Positions 1 to 64,000 of a stretch of DNA of 64,000 bases are shown here, one piece after another (the first letter of the stretch is position 1; every line of letters begins with the position of its first letter). Position numbers and translations under genes: made by a program. The notes beneath the pieces are model-generated. The model saw nothing but the letters and a program-made list of their open reading frames with translations. It did not search any database and was not told the DNA's origin. Origin of the DNA: Vitrella brassicaformis CCMP3155 (taxonomy: Eukaryota; Protista; Chromerida); contig CDMY01000265.1 of NCBI GenBank assembly GCA_001179505.1, positions 1-64,000 of the forward strand, in the 5' to 3' direction.

Positions 1-1393
1 CCAATTTGCCGTCCATCCATCCACGAGTGCGTGCGTGAGACAGACGTACGGAGATCGACTGCGGGTACTCGTTCTGGAGCTTGCGGAGGTACAAGTCGAC
101 ACACACGTTCTGGAGACACATGACACACAGCACACATCTCAATGCTGTGTGTCTCTGCAAAAGTGACTCACGTTGATGATGGATGCAGGGTTGGTGCGGA
201 TGGCGAACTCCATGGGGTCGGGGTCATTTGGATAGTCGAGCTGCCACTCGAAGAGGGCATCGGGGAAGTAGTTGACGCCCGAATACAGGGGGCCGGCGAC
301 TTGGGAGCCACCCACAGTCCTGATGGATGAACACACAAACATAGACACAGACACATATACAGGATCCCAGGATGGGTGTGTCGGGGTGTCACGTACAAGT
401 CCTTGAGGGTCAGGGGACACAGGGTCGGATCGTATTGCCCAGCACTGGCCATGTTCTGTATCTTGGTCAGCATGTCCTGACCACACACACACACACACAC
501 ATACACGGCTGGGATGTGTGTATCTCTTTGTGTGGGTGGGTGGCACTTGAGCAGCGATATCATCGGGTCCGCTCCTGTGACACACACACACACACACACG
601 AGAGGGTTTGTTTATGTGATGTAGGGCCAACTTCTTGCTCTTGTACTTGTACCTTGTTTTGGGCACGCCGAGCGGAGTTGTCGTGACGAGAGTGCCGACG
701 ATGAGGAGCACGGCCACCAGCAGCAGCACCACGATGACCACCAGCTGCATCAGCGACCGAGGAGGCGCGTACCTGCACATCCATGGCAACAACAGAGACA
801 TGGACACTTCCTGTGTGCTGTGTGGTGCTGTCTTGTCTGAGCGTGTGTGCACTGACGGCGTTGTGAGGCGCTGTCCGATGAGGTTGACGGCGTTCTTGAG
901 GCCCTCGCCGGTCGGCAAGTTGCTGAACCCAACTGATATCTGCCGCATGAGCTCTGTGTGTGCCATCCTGTAAAAAAGAGCCGGCTCGACTCCTGATTTC
1001 CAACTCAACGCCACCAGATTGTCTGAGTGAGTGAGAGAGACACACGCAGAGAGAGAGAGAGAGTCTGGTGGATGCGTCGATGTGTGGGTGGTTCTCGTGC
1101 ATGCGACCTTTCTTGGCATAGACCTACATGCACATTAATTAGCACAGATGAAGCTGTTTATCAGCTGCTTTTGCGTGAGTCTTCTTACGAGTATGGCTCC
1201 ATCGTGGCACTCTTTGTGTCCGAGTCCCCATCGGCTGAGCAGCGCCGACGCCAAGTCGTCCACATCCACACCTGACGGCAACTCGCTGCATGGCACGCAC
1301 ACAGAGACGCACAAGACGTGGCCAGAGAGAGACGTGAGCAAGCGAATGAAGAAAGGCTGACTTGATGAGTGCGACGCCCAGGTGGTAGTTTGC
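1..1393 (-). pseudogene. 5'-truncated duplicate of the TPM/MOLO-1-like membrane protein gene (3' end lies beyond the window edge); may still be expressed
   Basis: Bases 1-1393 align by eye with 10590-11973. Exons (ELPSGVDVDDLASALLSRWGLGHKECHDGAIL, DNLVALSWKSGVEPAL, TM segment LMQLVVIVVLLLVAVLLIVG) and splice sites are retained. Similarity stops abruptly at ANYHLG (1393), so the signal-peptide exon and the CDPDG part of exon 2 are absent. Confidence 0.6.
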
Positions 1394-1696: not shown

Positions 1697-4600
1697 TCAG
1701 TCGTCGTCGTCATCGTCGTTTTGGAGGGCGGCGAAGGGGTTGTTGGCGGAGACGCCGCTGCTGCCCTTGGAGCCCTTCTTGCCAGGGGCACCCTCCTTCC
1801 TGTCGGCCTGCTGGCGAGACGCTGCACACAAACACACGCACAGAGGAAGAGATAGATGGGGTCATCCATCCATCCAGCCATCCCTCTCTCTCTCTCTCTC
1901 TCTGGTCAGCGTACCGGTTGTGACGTGTTCGTTGCCCTTCCCATCGATGGAGATGGACCCGACCGTCGGCAGGGTGTTCTGACTCGACAGCTCGTCGTGA
2001 CGACGCACAATGCCCTCCTTACCACCGCCACTACCACCACCCTCCCCTCCAGCACCACCGGCAGCCGGGCTGTTCTCCTCCCTGCCACCGTGGCCGTCCA
2101 CCTGCGGCTCTGGCGAGTCGGCCGTCACGGGGGACGATGTGGGCGAGGGGCTGCCCTGCTTGGGGCGATAACCGAGGTCACCTGAGCGAGTGTGATGCAC
2201 ACCAGACAGCAAGCAATGCGGTTCTGGTGTTTTGGTTGTCATCTGGTTTGTGTATTTCTGACCTCGGCCGCGCCCCCCTCTCCCTCCTCTGCCAATGGGC
2301 GTCCTCTGCGACGACTGGTGGGACGTATTGAAGGCCCCGCTGGCCTGCCCTCGGCCTCTCGTGGTGCTGCTGGTGGTGGTGGTGGTGTTATAATGAATTG
2401 GGGCTGCTGGGGGAGCGGGCGAAGGGGAAGTGGCCGACTCGCCTGCATAGAGACGCGAGAGAAATGTTCATTGATTCATTGCGCGTGGGGGGTCGGGGGC
2501 TACCTTTGACGACAGCAGCGTATGATGGTCTCGGGCCACCACTGCTGAGTTGAGGGGGTGTCACGGGCGATGCTGCACATGGACCCACACACAGAGAGAG
2601 GTGCTGTGGCCTGGCGGGTGATTAATGCGTCCACGTGTCTATGTCGCACACCCACCTTCAGCCTGAGGAGTCTCTGCTATCTTGCCGTGGTCCGTCGGCG
2701 ACAGGTGAAGGCCTGACCGCCCAGCCGTGTCCGAACCTGACACACACGATGACACACAAGGCGGACACCGGACACACACGCGTGTTGTCACTTCTGTGGG
2801 CCGTGATGGACCTCTCTCTCACACAGACTGACCGTCGACAGGCGGGGGCGGGTGTGAGCGGGGCACCACCCCCTGTGGCGTTATGAGTGAGCCGGGCGGC
2901 AGGGTCTTGCCATGATGCTGCTGGTGCTGGTGCTCTCGGTCCTTCCACCTGTTCCACCTGTTGCCCCCGCCCCCTGAGGGCTTGCTGACTGCTGTGGCCG
3001 ACGCGGCCGGCGGGGTGGGCTGGCCAGGAGGGTGGTCGTGGTGGTCGTCGTCACCCTCCTTGTGGGTGTGGGTGTGGGTGTGGGTGTGCTTGGGTTTGCC
3101 TTGTGACCTGAGCAGTAGACAGCAGACACCAGACACACACAGCAGCACAGTGAGAGTGTGTGTCGGGGGTGGGGGATGGGGGGTGGAGAGGGAGGCGTAC
3201 GTTTGCCCATGTGTGTGTGCCGCCGACGCAGATGCAGATGCAGATGCAGACCCAGACGCCGACGCGGGCGTGAGCGGGTCGTCCTTGGCCCTCTCCTCCT
3301 GAAGCCAATGAGTGAATGGATGGATGGTGGGGTGGTGGGGGGTGGAGGGAGGGAGATTGCTTGAGTGACCGACCGACCTACCTGTTTCCGCTGCAGTATC
3401 TCCTTCTCATCTCGAGGCTTCCCGGTGCCGAATATCGACGCTGTGCGGCCCCTAATACACACACAGACACACAGAGAGACAGTTAGAGAGAGACTCAGAT
3501 GAGCGAGGATACACACCACCAGGAATGACAAGTCGAGCAAGTGGAGCGAGCACTAAAGAAGAAGTGACTCACTGTCTAGGGAGCGATGCGGGTGTGTCGA
3601 TCTGCCCCTTGGGCTTGTCGAGGTGGAGGTGCTGCACCGGGTGGAAGGGCTTGTCTTCTCCGTGTGCCGACGACTTGGGGCTGACGCTGCTCGCTGGGGT
3701 CATGTCGCCTGCAACCCATCCAGGTGTGGAGCCATGTGTGGATGGATGGATGGATGGCTTTATCTGTCTTGTCTGGTGCTGCTTTGGTCTTCATCTCACC
3801 TCTGTCTCTGTCTCGATTTCTGTCGCCGAATCGGTAAGACGGCCGCCGGTCCCTGCCCCTGTAGCCACTGTTTCGGGCTCTGTCCGAGCGCCCGAGGTTG
3901 GAGAACCTGTCGTGGCCCCCATCGCCACCGCGAGTGGGGTGCGGGCGACGACCGCCCATGCTGTCGGCGTCATAGCCGCGGTCACGATACCCGCCAACTC
4001 CACCCCCACCACCTGCACACACACCAGATCATGTGACGCCTGGCCGTGTGAGTGTGTGTCGTCGTGTGAGTGTGTGAATGAATGCGTGTGTGTGTGTGTC
4101 ACTCCCTCGACTCACGTTTGTCGTCATACTCGTCGTATCCGTCCCTGCCCGGCGGACGAGAGGGCCGGTCACGCTGACACCCACCTCCGCCGCCATCGCC
4201 ACGCTCTCGCTCGCTATAGAGCTCGTCCTTCTCCTCCTCCTCTGCACCAAGCAAGCCACACGCACACACGAGGGAGTGACCAGGCTGTGTCCATCGATTC
4301 ACTCGCCCACAGACAGACATACCGTCACGCCTTTGCGGGGTTCCCCTCTCGCCGCGGTGCTGGTGGTGGTGCGGCAGGACGTCCTCGTTGCCGCTCACGT
4401 CCGCCCACGCCTTGCGGCCCTCTCCGTCGCCAGCCGAGACGACCCGTCGGTAGGGGGATGTGCCAGCCGCGCCGCATCGCTGCTTTAAATCTGCAATGAG
4501 GTCCTCCGGCACCACACAGCACTCGGCGTCCTCACCTGCACACACACACATGCGCAACGAGGGAGGGGTGCTTGTGGTGGTGGTGGCGGTGGAGTTGGTG

Positions 4601-7600
4601 CCCCTTGGTGTTTGCTACGCACTCACTTGCGCATGTGGGGATGAAGTCCTGTGCGATGATGTCCTTGAGCTTGGGCAGGTCCAGCATCAGGTCGTCCAGG
4701 TACTCGGCGAACTCACGCACACTGCGACCACCAACACACACACCCAACAGACAGACAGAAGCAGAGATGAAGGTCGGGAGGGCCACAGGTCAATCCACGC
4801 CCCCATAGAAGTCTATAAATGCATGTGGTATGTATCATGGTCAGTCACTGCCCTTCCACAACCAGGAGGACGGTGACTCCAGAATCCTTCCTTCCCGAAG
4901 ACAACAGCTCTCTCATCATCCCAACCCTCCCTCCATCCCTGTCTCCCTCCCTCCATCCCTTCTGCCCTGCCTGTCTGCCTGCCAAGAGAGTTCACTGACC
5001 CGTCTTGAATGGCGTCTGGTGTGAGTGGTGCCGGACTGCCGTCGGTCGATGGCTTGGCCAGGAGGATCAGCAGCGGGTAACACACGGCCCGCTGCGACTC
5101 GTTTTGCTCAGCTATCCAAGACATCAAATCGGACACCACACGCTGATTGATCGATCCACAACACACACATGACGGGAGCGAGGGAGAATGAGAGGGAGAG
5201 AGAGGGAGAGAGAGAGAGCCACATCACAAAACATGTATTATGGATTCTGCTGTGTGTGTGGGTGTGGGTGTGGGTGTGGTATGGGCGTAGGTACCGATGT
5301 ATGTCTGCCGGTATGGCCATATCAGCAAAGTTCTTCGTCACGTCCTCGAGGTCACTTGAAAAGGTCTGACGCACAGACAGACAGACAGACAGAGGGAGAG
5401 AGAGAGAGAAAGAGAGAAAGAGAGAGAGAAAGAGAAAGAGAGAGAGAGAGAGATAGGCCGACACGGATGAGGGAGGGAATTGCTTGGTGTATCTAGCTAT
5501 CCATCTTAACTCTCTGCAGCACTCACTGCTACCGTGCCTGTCTGTCTGTCTGTCTGTGCGTGCGTGCGTGCGTGTGTGTGTCTGTCTGTCGGGGCCCGTC
5601 CGTACATATTCCTTGATGTAATCCTTGGCCTTTGACCGCATCCGGTGAATCAACTCCTCCTGGCATGACGACCGACCAAACCACGCGCAAATCAACCAAC
5701 CAACAAAGCTTTGAAGGAATGAAGAATCCACCTCGCCACCTGCCTCGCCTTTTTCCCTTACCCGGCCCTCGTCAGCAAAGGCCGCTGACGCAGGCTGGGG
5801 GCTCGTCCCCTGATTTGCACCACCCCCTGCTGCTGGTGCTGCTGCAGCAGCTGCTGGTGACGTGGACCTCTCGTCAGCGGCCGTTGGCTGCGTGGGCGGG
5901 GCTGTGGGGGTGGTGGCATTGCCCGTGGCCCTCTCCTCCTTCTCGCGCTCGCGACGCTGCCGCCTCTCCCGCCGCTCCTCGTGGCGATCGCCCCGCAGGT
6001 CGCTGCCCTTGAGCACACGGCGGGACGTTATCACACTGCACGGACAGACACGGACACAAAGGCATCCAGTGGTTGCAGGTAGCGGGACACAAGTGCCGAG
6101 GCGCATGGACGCGGTGCGCGGGCCATACCTGGTTGGCTTCCCGGGGGTGCGGGATGGGACGCGAGAGGCCTCCTGGAGACGGGATGACTGACGAACACAA
6201 CAGAGGGACATAGAGGGACAGACCACCGTGACACTCATCGGCAAGAAGATGCGGTGTGTTGTGTTGTGTTGTGTTGTGTTGTGTCGTCTCGCCCACACTG
6301 GCAGAGGCAGCAGCAGCAACGGCGGGGGGCTTGGGGCCCGCGCTGGGGATCGGGAGCAGACCCTCGGATGGGGAAGCCAACCCACGCAACTCCTGCTTAC
6401 ACAGACACACGTACACACACAGATCATTGTGTGTCTTGGGGGCATGGGCAATCGCACCAGGTTAGTTCTGCTGAGTACGATGTCCTCTCCCTTCTCCTCG
6501 ACATGTTGTCTGTGGATGTCCCTCAGCTTGGAGGGTCCCCCCACCATGCCCGGCTTCACCATGCGGCGCCAACCATTGGCTCGCAGATCCAACACATCCT
6601 ACGACCAACCACCATAACCAACCAGCCACCATAGCCAAACATGCACACCGACATACAATCTCCTGTCTATGGCGCCTCTGTCTGTCTGTCTGCCTCAGTG
6701 CGTACGCACACGAACCTTCATGAGGCACCTGACGCGGATGCCAAGGTTTTCGTCGCGCGACTTCTCCTCTAGCTTGTGGAACCACTGCTGCAGCTCCGCT
6801 CGCCTATTCCACTGCAGCGGTGATGGATTGATCCACGGATGGAGTCCACACACACACACACACACACACATGCATGAAGGAGCAGATGGGCAGTAGATAT
6901 CTTGTGTAGGGGTGGCGGGTTGGGTGCTCACGTCTTTCGCCACGTCGTACACGGGCCCGATGGTCGTGAGGAAGGTGCACACGCACTCCTGCACACATAC
7001 ACACACCGAGGTATGGATGGATGGATGGATGGTGCTCTGTGTGTGCAGGGGCGTGTGCGTTGATATCTTACGAATTGTGCCTCTCCCTCTTTGCCTTGTT
7101 TCTCGCCGTAGTGCCAGAGCTGCTTGAGGCACTCAAACAGCAAGTTGGCGCTCATGATACGCTCGATCAGCAGCTGACCTGCACCACACACACACAGAGA
7201 GAGAGAGAGACTCTGAGAGAGGCGGGTGAGCTGTGTGTGTGCGTTTCTGTCTGCGTCTGGTGTGGCACGCACCCACGAATTTGATATTGCCGAGCATCTG
7301 GTTCTTGTACTTCAAATAAGCCTCCGTGTAGTCGTTACCTGCACCGACAAAATAACACATGGAGAGAGCCGAGGGCCGTTTATGGTGAGTGAATGGATGG
7401 AGCTCGGGACAGGTGGGCGTGGGAGGGTACCTGTGAGGCCGTTGAGATTGTCAGGCGGCTTCAGGTACTTCTCAAACGACTCCTGACACCGATTCAACAG
7501 CATCCTGGGACGGCACACGCGCACATAAACACGCATAACCGCGGAGAAGACACTTGCAAGAATGATGAGTGCACCTTCTGAACTCCTTGTCCTCTTCTGT

Positions 7601-9354
7601 GCCCTCCTGGTGTCCATCGGCCTTGTCTCCCCTCTCCATGATGGCCTTCAGATTGTCCTTCAGAAGCACACACAGCTCCACATACATCTGATCAATGACA
7701 CAGACAGACAGACAGACAGACAGACAGAGTGCGTGTGTTTGTGGGTGTGTGGGTGTGTGGGTGTGTGTGTACCTGGATGAAGTGGTGCTGCGTGGTGGCC
7801 TTGTCAAAGACCATCCCCACGAGCGCCTCAATCTGATCGACACAGACACGACATGCATCGGCACACACACACGGAACCTCCCTGCCTTCTCCTGACTCCC
7901 TCGCCGACTCACCTCAGAGTTTTGAGTGATTCCAGCGTCGAGTATCTGTTGGTAGAGCCGGTCGAACTTTTCGATCGTCAGCTTGTTGAGAATCCCTTTC
8001 AACTTACGCAACACCGCCTCAGACTCGTTCCTGCACAGACAGACAGACAGACGGAACGACGTCGTGTTACAGTGTGCTGTGTTGCATACTGTGTGTCATG
8101 TAAGCTTACTGTTCAACCTTGGTCTTCTTCATAGACGCGACCCATGAGTTCTCACCCACCACCACCTTATTGTCATCGCGGTCGCGGTCGCGGCCTGAAC
8201 AAAGGAGTGCAGGCAGGCGACAAGCGTGTGTTCTATCTAGCGGCTCTTTCTCTCCCCCCACTCCGCCCCCTCTGTGGTGGGTGCTGACCTCCCCTCCAGC
8301 CGCTGTCATCCTCACGACCACAGCGCCTGGCAGACGAGCATGGCGTCTGTAAGTCAAGTGGCTGCGGCACGTATGTTTACTTACCATTTGTCGCGGCTCC
8401 ACTTGTCCGCATCATCACGATCACGGTCGCGCTGACCAGCCAATCAATCACACACACAGACGCTACAGCCTCCGCCAGTGTCAGGTTGCCCATCCAATGA
8501 GTGCATCTGTGTGCTCACGTCGTCTCTCCGGCTGTCCCCGTCTGCCGCAGTGCTGTCCCGGACGTTTCTGAAGCCGACTCTCCTCTGGAAGGACCCGAAG
8601 CTGCCCGCAGCCGGGCGGCCCCCTGCTGAGCCGCCTGGCCGGAAGCTGCCCTTCCGGGAACCGCCCGCACGGTGGAACTCGCCGATCTCGGTGGCCGCGG
8701 CCGAGTGGTCTGCACATGGATGGATGGATGGATGGATGGGAAGCACTGGCTGTGATTGTGATTGTAATTGTGATAGCGCTTGTGTTGTGTGTACCCTTGA
8801 GCAGGTACAGGGGGATGTTGTGGTTGTCTGGGAGCCTCTGGCAGTGCTCCTGAGGCAGGCAGATCAGGACACACATACACAGATGTGATGTGCACACTGG
8901 TATCCAGTCAGTGTCTGGGTGAGATGTCGATCTGTCTAGATCTGTGTGCGTTTTTGTCTTGTCTATATCGGCCGGCACGGTGCGGAGACACTTACCTGGT
9001 CTTTGAAGGACTTGAGGAAGTCGACGGGGTAGAACCGGGGGATGCCCCCGGACTGCTCAGCCTCCTTCTGCTCCTCAGCAGGCGCCTCCGGCACTTCAGC
9101 AGCAGGGGCCTCCCATAGGCGGAGGGGGAGGGGAAGAGGGAGAGGCTCGGGCTGCAGCCTGCCTCTCCTCCCACCGTCGTTTGACGCGTGCTCTGATGTC
9201 CTCGAGGCGTGCTCTGATGTCCTCGAGGCTTTCAGGCGCCAGTGGGGCCATCATGGCGGCGGCGACCCAGGTAGCGGTGCCGCCGCCGATGATGGCCCAC
9301 ACGGTGCCGCCCCACACCGTCTCGAGCAGCATCGGTTGGGAGGGAGGGAGGAAG
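1697..9354 (-). CDS. EIF4G: Translation initiation factor eIF4G (eIF4E-binding-like motif, MIF4G, MA3) with a long eIF4B-like C-terminal extension; multi-exon, 5' end unresolved at the scaffold gap
   Basis: Spliced exons give MIF4G hallmarks LRKLKGILNKLTIEKFDRLYQQIL, RMLLNRCQESFE, KNQMLGNIKFVGQLL and RVRCLMK..LDLRANGW. MA3-like VREFAEYLDDLMLDLPKL follows. RFYPVDFLKSFKDQ lies at 8996-9037. Stop TGA at 1697-1699 follows NPFAALQNDDDDDD. Confidence 0.9.
9186..9227. repeat. Perfect 2 x 21-bp tandem duplication (GCGTGCTCTGATGTCCTCGAG)
   Basis: Seen directly: 9186-9206 equals 9207-9227. Confidence 0.95.
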
Positions 9355-9654
9355 NNNNNNNNNNNNNNNNNNNNNNNNNNNNNNNNNNNNNNNNNNNNNN
9401 NNNNNNNNNNNNNNNNNNNNNNNNNNNNNNNNNNNNNNNNNNNNNNNNNNNNNNNNNNNNNNNNNNNNNNNNNNNNNNNNNNNNNNNNNNNNNNNNNNNN
9501 NNNNNNNNNNNNNNNNNNNNNNNNNNNNNNNNNNNNNNNNNNNNNNNNNNNNNNNNNNNNNNNNNNNNNNNNNNNNNNNNNNNNNNNNNNNNNNNNNNNN
9601 NNNNNNNNNNNNNNNNNNNNNNNNNNNNNNNNNNNNNNNNNNNNNNNNNNNNNN
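9355..9654. other. Scaffold gap of 300 N flanked on both sides by (GGGA)n
   Basis: Run of N; GGGAGGGAGG-type sequence on both flanks. Confidence 0.99.
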
Positions 9655-10435: not shown

Positions 10436-12192
10436 TCATGACCAGGAAGAAAGACTCGTTGAATGTGTCTCGTGCGCTGACTGACCGAGCTCTTGCGGTC
10501 TGATGGTCCAGTTGGCGGTCAGGCCGACAGCCAGCCAGCCTCTGACGTCCTCATCCTGACAACACACACACATACCAACCAACCGACGGCCAATTTGCCG
10601 TCCATCCATCCACGAGTGCGTGCGTGAGACAGACGTACGGAGATCGACTGCGGGTACTCGTTCTGGAGCTTGCGGAGGTACAAGTCGACACACACGTTCT
10701 GGAGACACACAGCACACATCTCAATGCTGTGTGTCTCTGCAAAAGTGACTCACGTTGATGACGGATGCAGGGTTGGTGCGGATGGCGAACTCCATGGGGT
10801 CTGGGTCATTTGGATAGTCGAGCTGCCACTCGAAGAGGGCATCGGGGAAGTAGTTGACGCCCGGGAAGAGGGGGCCGGCGACTTGGGAGCCACCCACAGT
10901 CCTGATGGATGAACGGATGGATTACATGACGCATACACAGAGGATGGGTGTGTCGGCGTGTCACGTACAAGTCCTTGAGGGTCAGGGGACACAGGGTCGG
11001 ATCGTATTGCCCAGCCCTGGCCATGTTCTGTATCTTGGTCAGCATGTCCTGACCACACACACACACACACACACACACACGGCTGGGATGTGTGTATCTC
11101 TTTGTGTGGGTGGGTGGCACTTGAGCAGCGATATCATCAGGTTCGCTCCTGTGACACACACACACACACACGAGAGGGTTTGTTTGTGTGATGTAGGGCC
11201 AACTTCTTGCTCTTGTACTTGTACCTTGTTTTGGGCACGCCGAGCGGAGTTGTCGTGACGAGAGTGCCGACGATGAGGAGCACGGCCACCAGCAGCAGCA
11301 CCACGATGACCACCAGCTGCATCAGCGACCGAGGAGGCGCGTACCTGCACATCCATGGCAACAACAGAGACATGGACATTTCCTGTGTGCTGTGCTGTCT
11401 TGTCTGTCTGAGCGTGTGTACTGACGGCGTTGTGAGGCGCTGTCCGATGAGGTTGACGGCGTTCTTGAGGCCCTCGCCGGTCGGCAAGTTGCTGAACCCA
11501 ACTGATATCTGCCGCATGAGCTCTGTGTGTGCCATCCCGTAATGCAGAGCCGGTTCGACGCCCGACCTCCACTTCAGCGCCACCAGATTGTCTGAGTGAG
11601 TGAGAGAGACACACGCAGAGAGAGAGAGAGAGAGAGTCTGGTGGATGCGTCGATGTGTGGGTGGTTCTTGTGCATGCGACCTTTCTTGGCGTAGACCTAC
11701 ATGTACATTCACATTAGCACAGATGAAGCTGTTTATCAGCTGCTTTTGCGTGAGTCTTCTTACGAGTATGGCTCCATCGTGGCACTCTTTGTGTCCGAGT
11801 CCCCATCGGCTGAGCAGCGCCGACGCCAAGTCGTCCACATCAACACCTGACGGCAACTCGCTGCATGACACGCACACAGAGACGCACATGATCGATGTGG
11901 CCAGAAAGAGACGTTAGCAAAAGAATGCAGGGAGAGCTGACTTGATGAGTGCGACGCCGAGGTGGTAGTTTGCTTGGCCGTACTTGCCGCATTTGTGTCT
12001 GCTGTCCTGCCGGATGAAGAGCAGCATGTCCTCTACCTCGTCGGCCTCTCGACGGCTGATGATGCCGTCAGGGTCGCACAGCCAGCTGTGTGGAATGTGG
12101 CGGCGATTGCTGCACACACACGCACAGAGAAAGAGACACGCACAAAGAGAGAGACACACGACGGTGAGTGAACGAATTTCACAAATGTTTCA

Positions 12193-60741: not shown

Positions 60742-63557
60742 CTATCTCGCACCGGACGTCTGGAACTGGCGGTAGAGCTCTGCAAAGCTCTCGCTGCCCT
60801 GATCGAATCCATTGCTTTTCGACGGCCGGTCGTCGAATGAAGACGATGAGCCGCCAGAGTATGAGCCGCCAGAATAAGAATTCGAAGAGAACCTCCTGCC
60901 GCCGCCCCGACCGCCCTCAAACCCCCCTCCCCCCCGGCTGCGCGGTCCGCGCGAAAACGTCCTCTCTCGCCGACCGGCTCCTCCAAACTCATTATCCCGA
61001 TCGAAGCCGCCACTGCGGAACCTGCTGCCGCTGCCGCCTTGGCTGCCATAGCCGCCAGCTCGGCCCCCGCGTCGTGGTCCGAAGCGGCCCTCGCCACCTG
61101 GCCCCCCGCGCCTGTCGCCGTACCTGCTGCCGCGTGTGAAGTCATTGACGGTCTCTTCTTGCAATGGTGGCAGTGAGTGGATGGCGGCGAGAGAGAAGTC
61201 GTCGAAGATGTTGGGGTCGGTGATGTCCTCGGGGACGCCCTGCTCCTGGTACTTGGTCATCAGGCTCACCAGCATCTTGGCCGTGTCGCTGTGCACGTCA
61301 AACTGACACACAACACACGGTAAGTTCAGAGAGGCGATGAGAGAGAGGCCCTGCGCTGCCCACGAAGGTCTGGCGGTGTTTCGCTATTTACGTGTGAATG
61401 TGATGTGCCTCACTCACCACGGCGTGTTTCATGTCTTGTGAGATTCGGATCTTGCCGAGGCGGCCCAGCGTGACGCGAAGGTCCTCAGACACACGATGGA
61501 TCCAGTACAACACATCCCTGAGAAGCCAGCAACAGAACACACACACACACCACCAGCCGGTTTGACACACACACACCAACCGTCCGTCTGTCTGTGACTG
61601 ACTGACCTTGCGTCTCTCCATCCCCTCTTTTGGTTGGTGAACTGCATAGTGGTGTGGTCGGGCATGCCATTGAGCAGCGACCGCTCCACCAGCTCCTGCT
61701 TCTTGGCCATCACCGCCAGACACCGCGCAAGCAACTCCTCCTGACCCATTCCCACACCATCAGACCGCTTCAACACGTCCCGGGCCGTCTCCAGGAAGAA
61801 GGGGATCACCGGCCCCTCGACGGTGTCCAGCTGCCGGGCCACCGCGCTGGCAGACGACTCCATGACGAGCTGTGTGGAGGGTGGCGGTTTGATGTCGAAC
61901 TTGACGCCGCATGAGCTCTCGAGTTTGGAGAGCTCCCATTTCTCCCGGTCCGAGTAGAGGAGGACGCAAGTGCCCTCCCTGCCGGCGCGGCCTGTCCTGC
62001 CTGATCGGTGGACGTAGGCGTCGGGGTCCTTGGGGGGCGAACACTGCACCACCAGATCCACATTGCCCACATCGATGCCGCGGGCAGCCACGTCCGTAGC
62101 CACCAGCACCTTGAACAGACCTGAAGACAGACACATACACACACGATGTGGTGCACAGAGAGAGAGAGAGAGAGAGCGCGATCTGGTGCGGGGCTCTTCC
62201 CACAGACCTTTTCTGAATCTCTGCATGGTGTGGTCTCGTGTCTGCTGTCCGATGTCGCCGTGTAGCACAGCTGCGCTGAATGCCTTGAAGGCCCCCTCGC
62301 TGGCCAGCTCGTCGGCCTCCCTCTTGGTCTGTGTGAAGACGATCGTCTGACCGCCACGCGACTCGACAGCGACGATGTCCTCGAGCACGGCCGCCTTGTC
62401 CTCGATGCGCTCCGGCACTTGCACGGCGATGTGACGCACCGATGTGGCCGTGCGCTGGGTGGACTTGCCAACGACGTCGACATCCAGTGGATTCTTGAGG
62501 TACTGCCGACTCATGTCCTTGACCCACCTGACGATATATGCCAAACAGCACCGATGACTGACTGCATGTCATGTCTGTGTCGTCCATTAATGGTGTGCTG
62601 CCCTGCCCACCTGGGTGTGGTGGCGCTGAACATGAGCACCTGGCAGCTCCTGACGTCAAAGGAGCCGAAAATCCGCTCAATATCCTCAGCAAAGCCCATG
62701 TTGAGCATCTCGTCCGCCTCGTCCAGCACCACGTGACGCAGACTGTCGAGCCGCAAGTGGCCCGACTGTATCAGATCCAGCAGCCGACCGGGCGTCCCCA
62801 CCACAATGTCCACGCCCTTGCGCAGAGCGTTCTCCTGCGGGCCGAACGGCACCCCGCCGTGGATGCAGGTGATGCCCATCCTGTGCACGCGCGCCACGTC
62901 GCCTATCTCCACCTCCACCTGCTTGGCCAGCTCTCGCGTCGGCTCCAGAACCAGGATCTTGGGGTCTCTGTCGCGCTGCACTTCGGGGATGGATTCCTTG
63001 TCGGTTCTGAGTCTCTCGAGCAGCGGCAGGCCGAACGCGACGGTCTTGCCGGTGCCGGTGCGGGAGCGGCCGATCATGTCGCTGCCGTCGTAGATGGGCG
63101 TGAAGGTCTGCGCCTGGATAGGCGTCATGTTGACGATGTTCTTGCGTGCCAGCACGTCGGACGTCTTGCCGCTGATCTGGCTGAATGATGCGAAGGTTGG
63201 CTGGTCGCGCGTGAGTGTGGTCAGATGCTCGTCCTCGTCTTCGACGATGGCCTCCTGCACCCACACATACACATACAGCAGCATGGAGGAGATGCTTTGC
63301 TTTGCTTGTAGTGGAGATCTACATATGTTGTCTGATGCACTACTCACAGGAAAGAGCAGTCTGTTTGGGTCTTCGACAACCAGCTGCATTCGCATGCCGG
63401 ATGATGATGACCCTCTGCCGCCGCTACCCCGATTGACACGGCGCAGAAACGATGAGGCGGGAAGCAACGACGGCGAGAAACCCACCACATGAGCCGCCTC
63501 GTGCGCCAGTAGCAGAAGCACGACTGCAAGAGTGCTCAACATGGTCCTGAACTCCAT
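60742..63557 (-). CDS. Plastid-targeted DEAD-box RNA helicase with GUCT domain (RH3/DDX21-like) and RGG-rich tail
   Basis: Bipartite leader (VVLLLLAHEAAHVVG/FSPSLL). Q motif TPIQ, SRTGTGKT, PTRELA, TPGRLLD, LDEADEML, SAT, LHGDIGQ, ATDVAARGID, HRSGRTGRAG. GUCT-like ERSLLNGMPDHTTM..FDV. RGG tail; stop at 60742. Confidence 0.9.
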
Positions 63558-63691: not shown

Positions 63692-64000
63692 ATGGCGAAG
63701 AAGGGCAAGGGAGTCAAGATGAGCATGGTGAGCCGACAGACAGACAGGAAGAGGCGAACACACACGAGGCAGGAGGAGCGCTGGAACGAACAGAGTGATG
63801 TATGTGTGCTTGGCGTGACGCTGTTGACGTCATATTCCGTCTGTCTGCGTTTGCCTCGTGTGTGTCGCGTTGTGTTGTGTGTGTACCTGGCAGGCCGACT
63901 TGGCGCAGGAGTTCGGCGGTCCTGTTCCGGGACAGTCAAGCCTGCCCACCGAGTCCGGCAATGCGTAAGGACACACCTGCCCTGCACACACCACACACCG
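63692..64000 (+). CDS. 5' part of a gene, MAKKGKGVKMSM|ADLAQEFGGPVPGQSSLPTESGN; weakly resembles an eIF4B-type N-terminus
   Basis: ATG at 63692, donor gtgagc, acceptor ggcag, second donor gtaagg; truncated by the window end. Confidence 0.4.
   Translation, partial: MAKKGKGVKMSMVSRQTDRKRRTHTRQEERWNEQSDVCVLGVTLLTSYSVCLRLPRVCRVVLCVYLAGRLGAGVRRSCSGTVKPAHRVRQCVRTHLPCTHHTP

What the first reader, a model, noticed from the sequence alone, without database searches (positions are those of the whole stretch)
1697..4535. Apparent eIF4G-eIF4B fusion: the eIF4G frame continues into an eIF4B-like C-terminal half
The exon 4535-4323 carries the last MA3 helix (VVPEDLIADLKQRC) straight into KAWADVSGNED (WAD at 4399-4407) with no stop. 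The next exons splice in consistent phase to give, in the same order as in eIF4B: an Asp/Arg/Tyr/Gly-rich tract (GRDGYDEYDDK, GYRDRGYDAD, YRGRDRRPSYRFGDRNRDRDR; DRYG-like); RTASIFGTGKPRDEKEILQRKQ|EERAK (3382-3451), resembling the eIF4B/eIF4H SIFGGAKP(V/R)D..E motif; and a final NNPFAALQNDDDDDD resembling the YAAL + acidic tail of eIF4B. Canonical eIF4G ends in MA3 (plus W2 in animals), and eIF4B is a separate eIF4A cofactor. One polypeptide joining the scaffold and the helicase stimulator (no RRM recognised) would be an unusual initiation-factor design. I am not aware of it being described, but cannot check.
Basis: partly seen in the sequence, partly recalled or inferred. Interest (0 to 1): 0.8.

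Follow-up and report, generated by a model that had tools for sequence, protein, structure and literature searches.

The report
eIF4G gene with eIF4B-like tail
In the alga Vitrella brassicaformis, one gene joins the translation scaffold eIF4G to a tail derived from the helicase helper eIF4B/eIF4H; the join is real in the DNA, but this copy lacks the RNA-binding domain and looks like a loosely constrained, possibly damaged duplicate.

Summary
The window is the start of Vitrella brassicaformis contig CDMY01000265.1. Exon 4535-4323 (minus strand) carries the last MA3 helix and the WAD motif in one open frame. Eleven further GT-AG exons continue in phase to the stop at 1697. The public 35-exon gene model (P0003, 1406 aa, named only "MIF4G domain-containing protein") has exactly this tail.

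Related alveolate eIF4Gs end within about 10 residues of the junction. The tail alone matches no profile. Two paralogs carry the same WAD segment followed by an RRM whose best single-domain matches among solved structures are eIF4H and eIF4B, then an RD/Y-rich tract shared with this tail. The SIFGxGKPRD block matches published human eIF4B/eIF4H peptides far better than shuffled tails do. So the tail is an eIF4B/4H-derived module that has lost its RRM.

Caveats:
- The public model keeps the frame only through its worst donor site. The donor used by an expressed sister copy would frameshift this copy at residue 694.
- Exons diverge as fast as introns.
- Spliced tail transcripts exist, but none is shown linked to the scaffold.
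- The scan noted sibling chimeras elsewhere in this genome.

I found no published description of such a fusion.

The parts
1697..9332 (-). Whole public gene model: 35 exons, 1406 aa (P0003). The window equals CDMY01000265.1 positions 1-64000. The start codon lies 23 bases from an assembly gap, so the N-terminus is uncertain.
   Evidence: Exact spliced mapping of P0003 onto the window; locus look-up; N run at 9355-9654.
9005..9037 (-). RFYPVDFLKSF, the counterpart of the eIF4E-binding YxxxxL motif. The residue after L is K, as it is R in the Perkinsus homologue.
   Evidence: Sequences; coordinates. Binding not tested.
6575..8011 (-). MIF4G domain (residues 233-464), spread over exons 8-16.
   Evidence: Pfam PF02854, E 2.7e-32, 112.6 bits.
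4468..5656 (-). MA3-type domain (residues 648-812), exons 20-24.
   Evidence: Pfam MA3 is only sub-threshold (E 0.0022, 18.4 bits). It aligns with the MA3 domains of four alveolate eIF4Gs. The profile of that alignment hits PDCD4 and eIF4G MA3 domains in the PDB at E 1e-10 to 1e-5.
5228..5293 (-). 22-residue His/Thr-rich insert of the public model. It is probably intron sequence read through to keep the frame. The ordinary donor would follow 5295.
   Evidence: The insert falls in a gap against all four relatives. The model's donor scores -4.0, below all 33 other donors of the gene. The donor after 5295 scores 3.7 but yields a stop at residue 694. The expressed sister copy has 72 letters where this copy has 71.
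4323..4535 (-). Junction exon 24: the last MA3 helix (4515-4474), an 18-residue linker, and the WAD block (4419-4372), all in one exon.
   Evidence: Genomic contig X5 record 18 spans 4315-4495 without a difference.
3707..4149 (-). Arg/Asp/Gly/Tyr-rich (DRYG-like) tract, residues 892-974 (exons 25-27). The RRM of the paralogs is missing at this place.
   Evidence: Comparison with P0001 and P0002. The introns here are 103 and 91 bases long, too short to hide an RRM exon.
3278..3450 (-). GRTASIFGTGKPRDEKEILQRKQ|EERAKDD, the eIF4B/eIF4H-type SIFGGxKP motif (exons 28-29).
   Evidence: Smith-Waterman score 48 against the human eIF4H C-terminal peptide; shuffled tails score 26.2 +/- 3.6 and 0 of 2000 reach 48. 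Against the eIF4B peptide at residue 358, 1 of 2000 shuffles reaches the observed score. Peptides taken from PMC5988510 and PMC3808542.
2180..2389 (-). Thr-run plus RG-rich block (residues 1235-1277), shared with the C-termini of paralogs P0001 and P0002.
   Evidence: blastp 64% identity; blastn 78% identity.
1697..1744 (-). NNPFAALQNDDDDDD C-terminus and TGA stop.
   Evidence: The last intron and at least 96 bases of 3' UTR are confirmed by spliced contig X1 record 1. The likeness to the eIF4B C-terminus rests on memory only.

Best explanation
This is a lineage-specific mosaic gene of Vitrella brassicaformis. An eIF4G-type scaffold (YxxxxL motif, MIF4G, MA3) is continued in the same exon and frame by a module descended from an eIF4B/eIF4H-like factor.

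The original module had a WAD block, an RRM, an RD/Y-rich tract and then further tail, as paralog P0002 still shows. The copy in this window has lost the RRM. It keeps the WAD block, the DRYG-like tract, the SIFGxGKPRD motif and an acidic end.

If translated as one chain, the disordered tail would sit beside the eIF4A-binding MIF4G and MA3 domains. It could then supply eIF4B-like RNA contact or eIF4A stimulation in cis. This step is inferred, not shown.

This particular copy is most likely a relaxed or partly damaged duplicate and not the cell's main eIF4G. Its MA3 is interrupted: either frameshifted or carrying a forced 22-residue insert. Its exons evolve as fast as its introns. A near-identical sister copy with another 3' end is expressed about five-fold higher.
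For: - Fused frame and public model.
- MIF4G and MA3.
- Relatives stop at the junction.
- The only hit in 1.84 billion representatives is paralog P0001, which has MIF4G, the same WAD block and an RRM.
- The RRMs of the paralogs match eIF4H and eIF4B best as single domains. For P0001 these are the top four hits. For P0002 nucleolin ranks first overall only by adding three weak stretches.
- P0002 links WAD, RRM, the RD/Y tract and the GDMTPAS block of this tail.
- SIFG motif statistics.
- The embedding search of residues 820-1060 puts three eIF4B clusters on top. Scores are 0.75-0.78, so this is a lead only.
- Tail exons are transcribed and spliced, with exact matches.
- Relaxed constraint: exon identity 0.876 against intron identity 0.895 versus L001; 13 of 18 changed codons against variant contigs (sister copy or other paralogs) are nonsynonymous, 5 of 8 in the MA3 exons of the sister copy.
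- Donor problem.
Against: - The tail alone has no Pfam hit, including plant eIF-4B PF06273. It also has no hit to full-length human eIF4B (6fec_u) at E up to 10.
- The 23-residue SIFG exon did not retrieve eIF4B from the PDB.
- The WAD block alone is not significant.
- The one-base shortfall in exon 21 could be an assembly error. No run gave depth at 5243-5439.
- All 35 exons are otherwise intact, which a long-dead gene would not show.
- The sister copy could be an allele and not a paralog.
Confidence: 0.6

Rival explanations
1. It is a fully working single polypeptide. In this reading it is a principal eIF4F scaffold of Vitrella that carries its eIF4B-like helicase cofactor in cis, and the exon 21 problem is an assembly error or is bypassed.
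For: - 35 exons with canonical borders and no stop.
- The tail is spliced and expressed.
- The fusion of scaffold linker to WAD block is kept in three loci.
- Skipping exon 21, or using the model's donor, both keep the frame.
- eIF4B is reported as unrecognised in dinoflagellates and Apicomplexa (PMC6027434).
Against: - The model's donor is worse than all 33 others.
- MA3 is sub-threshold in Pfam.
- Exons are no better conserved than introns, and substitutions are mostly nonsynonymous.
- A sister copy is expressed about five-fold higher.
- There is no RRM.
Confidence: 0.2
2. The tail is an ordinary low-complexity extension with no eIF4B ancestry. In this reading the WAD, DRYG-like, SIFG and FAAL resemblances are chance products of an Arg/Asp/Gly-rich composition.
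For: No profile or database search with the tail itself finds eIF4B. The WAD match is not significant. Atlas scores are below 0.8.
Against: The same WAD-to-GRDxYDE segment (72% identical) precedes an eIF4H/eIF4B-type RRM in the paralogs. The SIFG motif beats 2000 of 2000 and 1999 of 2000 shuffles. The motif order is the same as in human eIF4B.
Confidence: 0.12
3. There are two transcription units that the gene model has joined. The scaffold transcript ends near 4466, and the tail is made from its own start site.
For: - The expressed sister contig matches exons down to 4466 and then runs on into unlike sequence. That is exactly where the tail begins (residue 813).
- At the sites that tell the copies apart in the MA3 exons, RNA contigs show only the sister copy.
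Against: - The junction lies inside one exon with no stop. There is no ATG before residue 919.
- Genomic contig X5 record 18 spans the junction.
- Contigs drop minor variants, so absence proves nothing.
- The paralogs show the same scaffold-to-WAD continuity.
Confidence: 0.1

Closest known systems
Human eIF4B (P23588)
   Same: The order of elements is the same: an N-terminal SWADE-type block, an Asp/Arg/Tyr/Gly-rich tract, then ASIFGGAKPVD (here ASIFGTGKPRD). The protein is long and disordered with an acidic end. The RRM of the Vitrella paralogs matches the eIF4B RRM at E 7e-5 to 2e-6.
   Different: This gene has no RRM. It shows no detectable overall sequence match. It is attached to eIF4G instead of being a free factor.
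Human eIF4H (Q15056)
   Same: It is the best solved-structure match of the P0001 RRM (2dng, E 2e-6) and level with eIF4B as the best single-domain match of the P0002 RRM. Its C-terminal ...SAIFGGARPREEVVQKEQE aligns with ...ASIFGTGKPRDEKEILQRKQE.
   Different: eIF4H is a 248-residue free protein that ends at this motif. Here the motif lies in the middle of a 594-residue tail.
Canonical alveolate eIF4G (P0004, P0005, P0007, Perkinsus P0008)
   Same: YxxDFL motif, MIF4G and MA3 in the same order, 32-35% identity.
   Different: P0004, P0005 and P0008 end within about 10 residues of the last MA3 helix, and P0007 adds only a short Ser-rich end. None has WAD, SIFG or RRM elements.
Vitrella paralogs P0001 (CDMY01000613) and P0002 (CDMY01000880)
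   Same: They share the same MIF4G and linker (84-88% DNA identity), the same WAD segment and the same Thr/RG block. They are scaffold-plus-eIF4B-like fusions too.
   Different: They keep the RRM but lack MA3, the SIFG block and the acidic end. P0001 starts with MGNCC. P0002 continues into a GYF domain.

Membership tests
eIF4G | MIF4G (HEAT-1) domain | tested here: met
   Pfam PF02854, E 2.7e-32, residues 233-464.
eIF4G | MA3 (HEAT-2) domain after MIF4G | tested here: inconclusive
   Pfam score is 18.4 bits, below the 23.2 cut-off. The region aligns with the MA3 of four relatives, and the joint profile hits PDCD4 and eIF4G MA3 at 1e-10 to 1e-5. The first third is disrupted by an insert or a frameshift.
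eIF4G | eIF4E-binding YxxxxL-hydrophobic motif before MIF4G | tested here: inconclusive
   YPVDFLK is present (9005-9037). The last position is K, where Perkinsus has R. Binding not testable.
eIF4G | Binds eIF4A and eIF3 and recruits the 43S complex | not testable with these tools
   Needs biochemistry.
eIF4B / eIF4H | Single RRM of the eIF4B/4H subtype | tested here: not met
   No RRM in this gene (Pfam; introns too short). It is present in paralogs P0001 and P0002, whose best single-domain PDB hits are eIF4H and eIF4B. The RNP aromatic residues of the paralog RRMs are replaced.
eIF4B / eIF4H | SIFGGA(K/R)P motif after the RRM/DRYG part | tested here: met
   ASIFGTGKPRD. Of 2000 shuffled tails, 0 and 1 reach the observed scores against the published human peptides.
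eIF4B / eIF4H | DRYG-rich self-association region | tested here: inconclusive
   An Arg/Asp/Gly/Tyr-rich tract lies at residues 892-974 in the right position. This rests on composition only, and no alignment is possible.
eIF4B / eIF4H | Family-level sequence or profile match | tested here: not met
   No Pfam eIF-4B (PF06273) hit, and no hit to full-length human eIF4B 6fec_u at E up to 10. Only an embedding lead at 0.75-0.78.
eIF4B / eIF4H | Stimulates eIF4A helicase; binds RNA through a C-terminal Arg-rich region | not testable with these tools
   Needs biochemistry.

The most novel reading that the evidence does not exclude
In chromerids the 'missing' eIF4B of myzozoans is not lost. It has been absorbed into eIF4G, so a working eIF4F scaffold carries its helicase cofactor in cis. 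The Vitrella family of scaffold-plus-4B genes would then be diversified, functional versions of that design, with or without RRM, MA3, GYF or a lipid anchor.
Probability: 0.2. Interest if true: 0.8.

Novelty: new variant of a known kind. Interest (0 to 1): 0.5.

Why it matters
eIF4B is described as unrecognised in dinoflagellates and apparently lacking in Apicomplexa (PMC6027434). Here a close free-living relative of Apicomplexa has eIF4B/eIF4H-type modules, and every copy I could inspect sits behind an eIF4G-type scaffold or inside another gene.

If any of these chimeras works, it would be a natural experiment in tethering the eIF4A cofactor to the scaffold. It would also guide the search for cryptic eIF4B function in parasites.

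If they are decaying duplicates, they document an unusually active shuffling of translation-factor exons in this genome. They would also warn against taking the public gene models at face value.

Tried and rejected
- Pfam on ten single-exon pieces gave nothing useful.
- PDB phmmer with the SIFG exon, the last exon and the junction exon gave only chance hits: a designed protein, antibody light chains and TALE repeats.
- The word search with the junction piece found nothing in its length range.
- The atlas search with the whole tail gave no usable hit.
- I looked for tail-like coding elsewhere in the window and for SIFG- or acidic-end-type exons in L001 and L002. Nothing convincing turned up; the matches were only His/Thr and low-complexity noise.
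- I checked whether the 1.4-kb repeats that flank the gene occur at the paralog loci. They do not.
- I considered a hidden RRM exon in this gene. I rejected it because the introns around the site are 81-121 bases long.
- I considered that the open frame alone proves coding. I rejected that because one other frame of the spliced tail has a single stop.

Full report
**What is there**

The window is the first 64 kb of Vitrella brassicaformis CCMP3155 contig CDMY01000265.1. Exon 4535-4323 and eleven further exons down to 1697 all have AG/GT borders. Spliced together they give one 617-residue frame.

This reading is letter for letter the C-terminus (residues 790-1406) of the public protein P0003. 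P0003 is 1406 aa long and is named only "MIF4G domain-containing protein". Its 35 exons map exactly to 9332-1697. The start codon lies 23 bases from a 300-base assembly gap (9355-9654), so the N-terminus is unreliable.

The junction is as described. VVPEDLIADLKQRC (4515-4474) and KAWADVSGNED (WAD at 4407-4399) lie in one exon with no stop and no ATG between them.

**RNA evidence**

One call of read laying (5901 letters) showed that runs X4 and X5 hold unspliced, genomic contigs. Runs X1 and X6 hold spliced ones.

- Exact-match spliced contigs confirm introns 4115-4013 and 1914-1822. They also support 3799-3709, but weakly.
- Contigs of a sister copy confirm 4626-4536, 4999-4722, 6931-6812 and 7071-6989.
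- The tail of this copy is therefore transcribed and spliced.
- A genomic contig (X5 record 18) spans 4315-4495 without a difference.

What is not shown is one RNA molecule linking this copy's scaffold exons to its tail. At the sites that tell the copies apart in exons 22-24, the RNA contigs show only the sister copy. That copy is about five-fold deeper. Contigs drop minor variants, so this absence proves nothing.

The sister contig matches down to 4466 and then runs on into unlike sequence. Position 4467 is the first base of residue 813, exactly where the tail begins.

**The scaffold half**

- Pfam finds MIF4G at E 2.7e-32.
- MA3 is only sub-threshold for this protein alone (18.4 bits).
- The MA3 region aligns with four alveolate eIF4Gs, and the joint profile hits PDCD4 and eIF4G MA3 domains at 1e-10 to 1e-5.
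The tail is therefore an addition.

**Is the tail eIF4B-like?**

Taken alone, no search says so.

- Pfam finds nothing, including the plant eIF-4B family.
- PDB searches find nothing, although full-length human eIF4B is in that library as 6fec_u.

The decisive evidence came from paralogs.

- The exhaustive search with the junction piece found a single protein in 1.84 billion representatives, P0001 of the same genome.
- P0001 has an MGNCC start, MIF4G, the same linker and the same GRKAWADVSDDEDVLP...GRDRYDEHDD segment. An RRM follows.
- P0002 has linker, WAD and RRM, then an RD/Y-rich tract ending in RDRDRGDMTPAS, and then a GYF domain. The RDRDRGDMTPAS block is also in this tail.
- Among all PDB sequences the P0001 RRM hits eIF4H (2dng, 2e-6) and eIF4B (2j76, 1wi8, 6fec_u) as its top four. 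For P0002 eIF4H and eIF4B are the best single-domain matches.
- The tail of the window gene is therefore the flanks of an eIF4B/eIF4H-type module from which the RRM has been lost. The introns at that place are too short to hide it.
- Further down, ASIFGTGKPRDEKEILQRKQE matches the human eIF4H C-terminal peptide (PMC5988510) with score 48. Shuffled tails score 26.2 +/- 3.6, and 0 of 2000 reach 48.
- The same block matches the human eIF4B peptide at residue 358 (PMC3808542), with 1 of 2000 shuffles reaching the score.
- The WAD block alone is not significant.
- The likeness of the acidic end to eIF4B rests on my memory only.
- An embedding search of residues 820-1060 put three eIF4B clusters on top, but at scores that count only as a lead.

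**State of this copy**

Three things argue that it is not a well-kept gene.

1. The frame in exon 21. The public model reads 66 bases of His/Thr-coding, intron-like sequence (5293-5228) as exon. This gives a 22-residue insert that no relative has. Its donor scores -4.0, below all 33 other donors of the gene. The ordinary donor after 5295 scores 3.7, but it gives a frameshift and a stop at residue 694. The sister transcript has 72 letters where this copy has 71. This copy is therefore one base short, through mutation or assembly error. No run gave depth at 5243-5439, so I could not decide which. Skipping exon 21 would also keep the frame.
2. Exons versus introns. Against paralog locus L001, exons are 87.6% identical and introns 89.5%.
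3. Kind of substitutions. Against the variant contigs (sister copy or other paralogs), 13 of 18 changed codons are nonsynonymous. In the MA3 exons of the sister copy the count is 5 of 8.

Against decay, the other 34 exon borders are intact and no stop occurs.

**Context**

DNA comparison shows a mosaic.

- Window 8132-5651 matches L001 at 84%.
- The 1.2 kb that encode MA3 have no counterpart in L001.
- Window 4449-3991 matches again.
- The RRM region of L001 has no counterpart here.
- Window 2411-2199 matches again.

A fourth locus (L004) holds only RRM fragments.

Earlier notes of this scan list several more eIF4G- or eIF4B-like chimeras in this genome, one of them shown to be broken. I verified two of these notes myself: P0001 and P0002.

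A review states that eIF4B has not been recognised in dinoflagellates and seems absent from Apicomplexa (PMC6027434). I found no paper describing an eIF4G-eIF4B fusion.

**Verdict**

The reading "eIF4G continued by an eIF4B-like half" is right at the level of gene architecture and descent. It is new in the sense that nobody has named it, although the gene model is public.

Whether this locus makes one working polypeptide is open, and the signs point to a relaxed duplicate in a shuffled gene family. Interest is moderate. It would be high if any family member proves to be a working scaffold with a built-in cofactor.

Noticed in passing
window 1-1393 and 10590-11973: The gene is bracketed by 1.4-kb direct repeats, 93.6% identical. 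Each carries an open frame, and the public annotation calls a 183-aa gene in the copy at 46-966. The repeats are absent from paralog loci L001 and L002.
   Followed up: partly
window 4466-7176 (variant contigs of runs X1, X5, X6): A sister eIF4G copy (or allele) is 93-98% identical in the MIF4G and MA3 exons, with similar introns. It is expressed about five-fold higher and diverges from this gene exactly at the scaffold/tail junction. It is not in the window. It may be the locus of scan note s1-227106.
   Followed up: partly
L002 (CDMY01000880.1, 13.4 kb): The public model P0002 strings together repeated copies of the eIF4G linker, two eIF4B-like RRM modules and a GYF domain. It looks like a poorly resolved tandem array. 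It has the same Tim17-like downstream neighbour as L001.
   Followed up: partly
P0001 residues 700-790; P0002 residues 178-265: The eIF4B/4H-type RRMs of the paralogs have lost the aromatic residues of both RNP motifs (LILDNI and GRCYVQF). Pfam scores the RRM below its threshold in P0001. This suggests altered or lost RNA binding.
   Followed up: no
L004 7919-8668 (CDMY01000176.1): Fragments of the same RRM module sit inside an unrelated, garbled gene model (P0009). The module is dispersed in the genome.
   Followed up: partly
window 62511-63557, minus strand: A 348-aa open frame has DEAD-box helicase motifs (GTGKT, DEAD) behind a hydrophobic N-terminus. Next to it, at 63692 onward, the scan notes another eIF4B-like gene that runs off the window.
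   Followed up: no
window 3025-3102 and 5228-5293: CACAC-type microsatellite sequence is read as His/Thr runs in the public coding model. The stretch at 5228-5293 is probably intron. The run in exon 30 (HTHTHTHTH) could not be checked, because reads are cut at these repeats.
   Followed up: no
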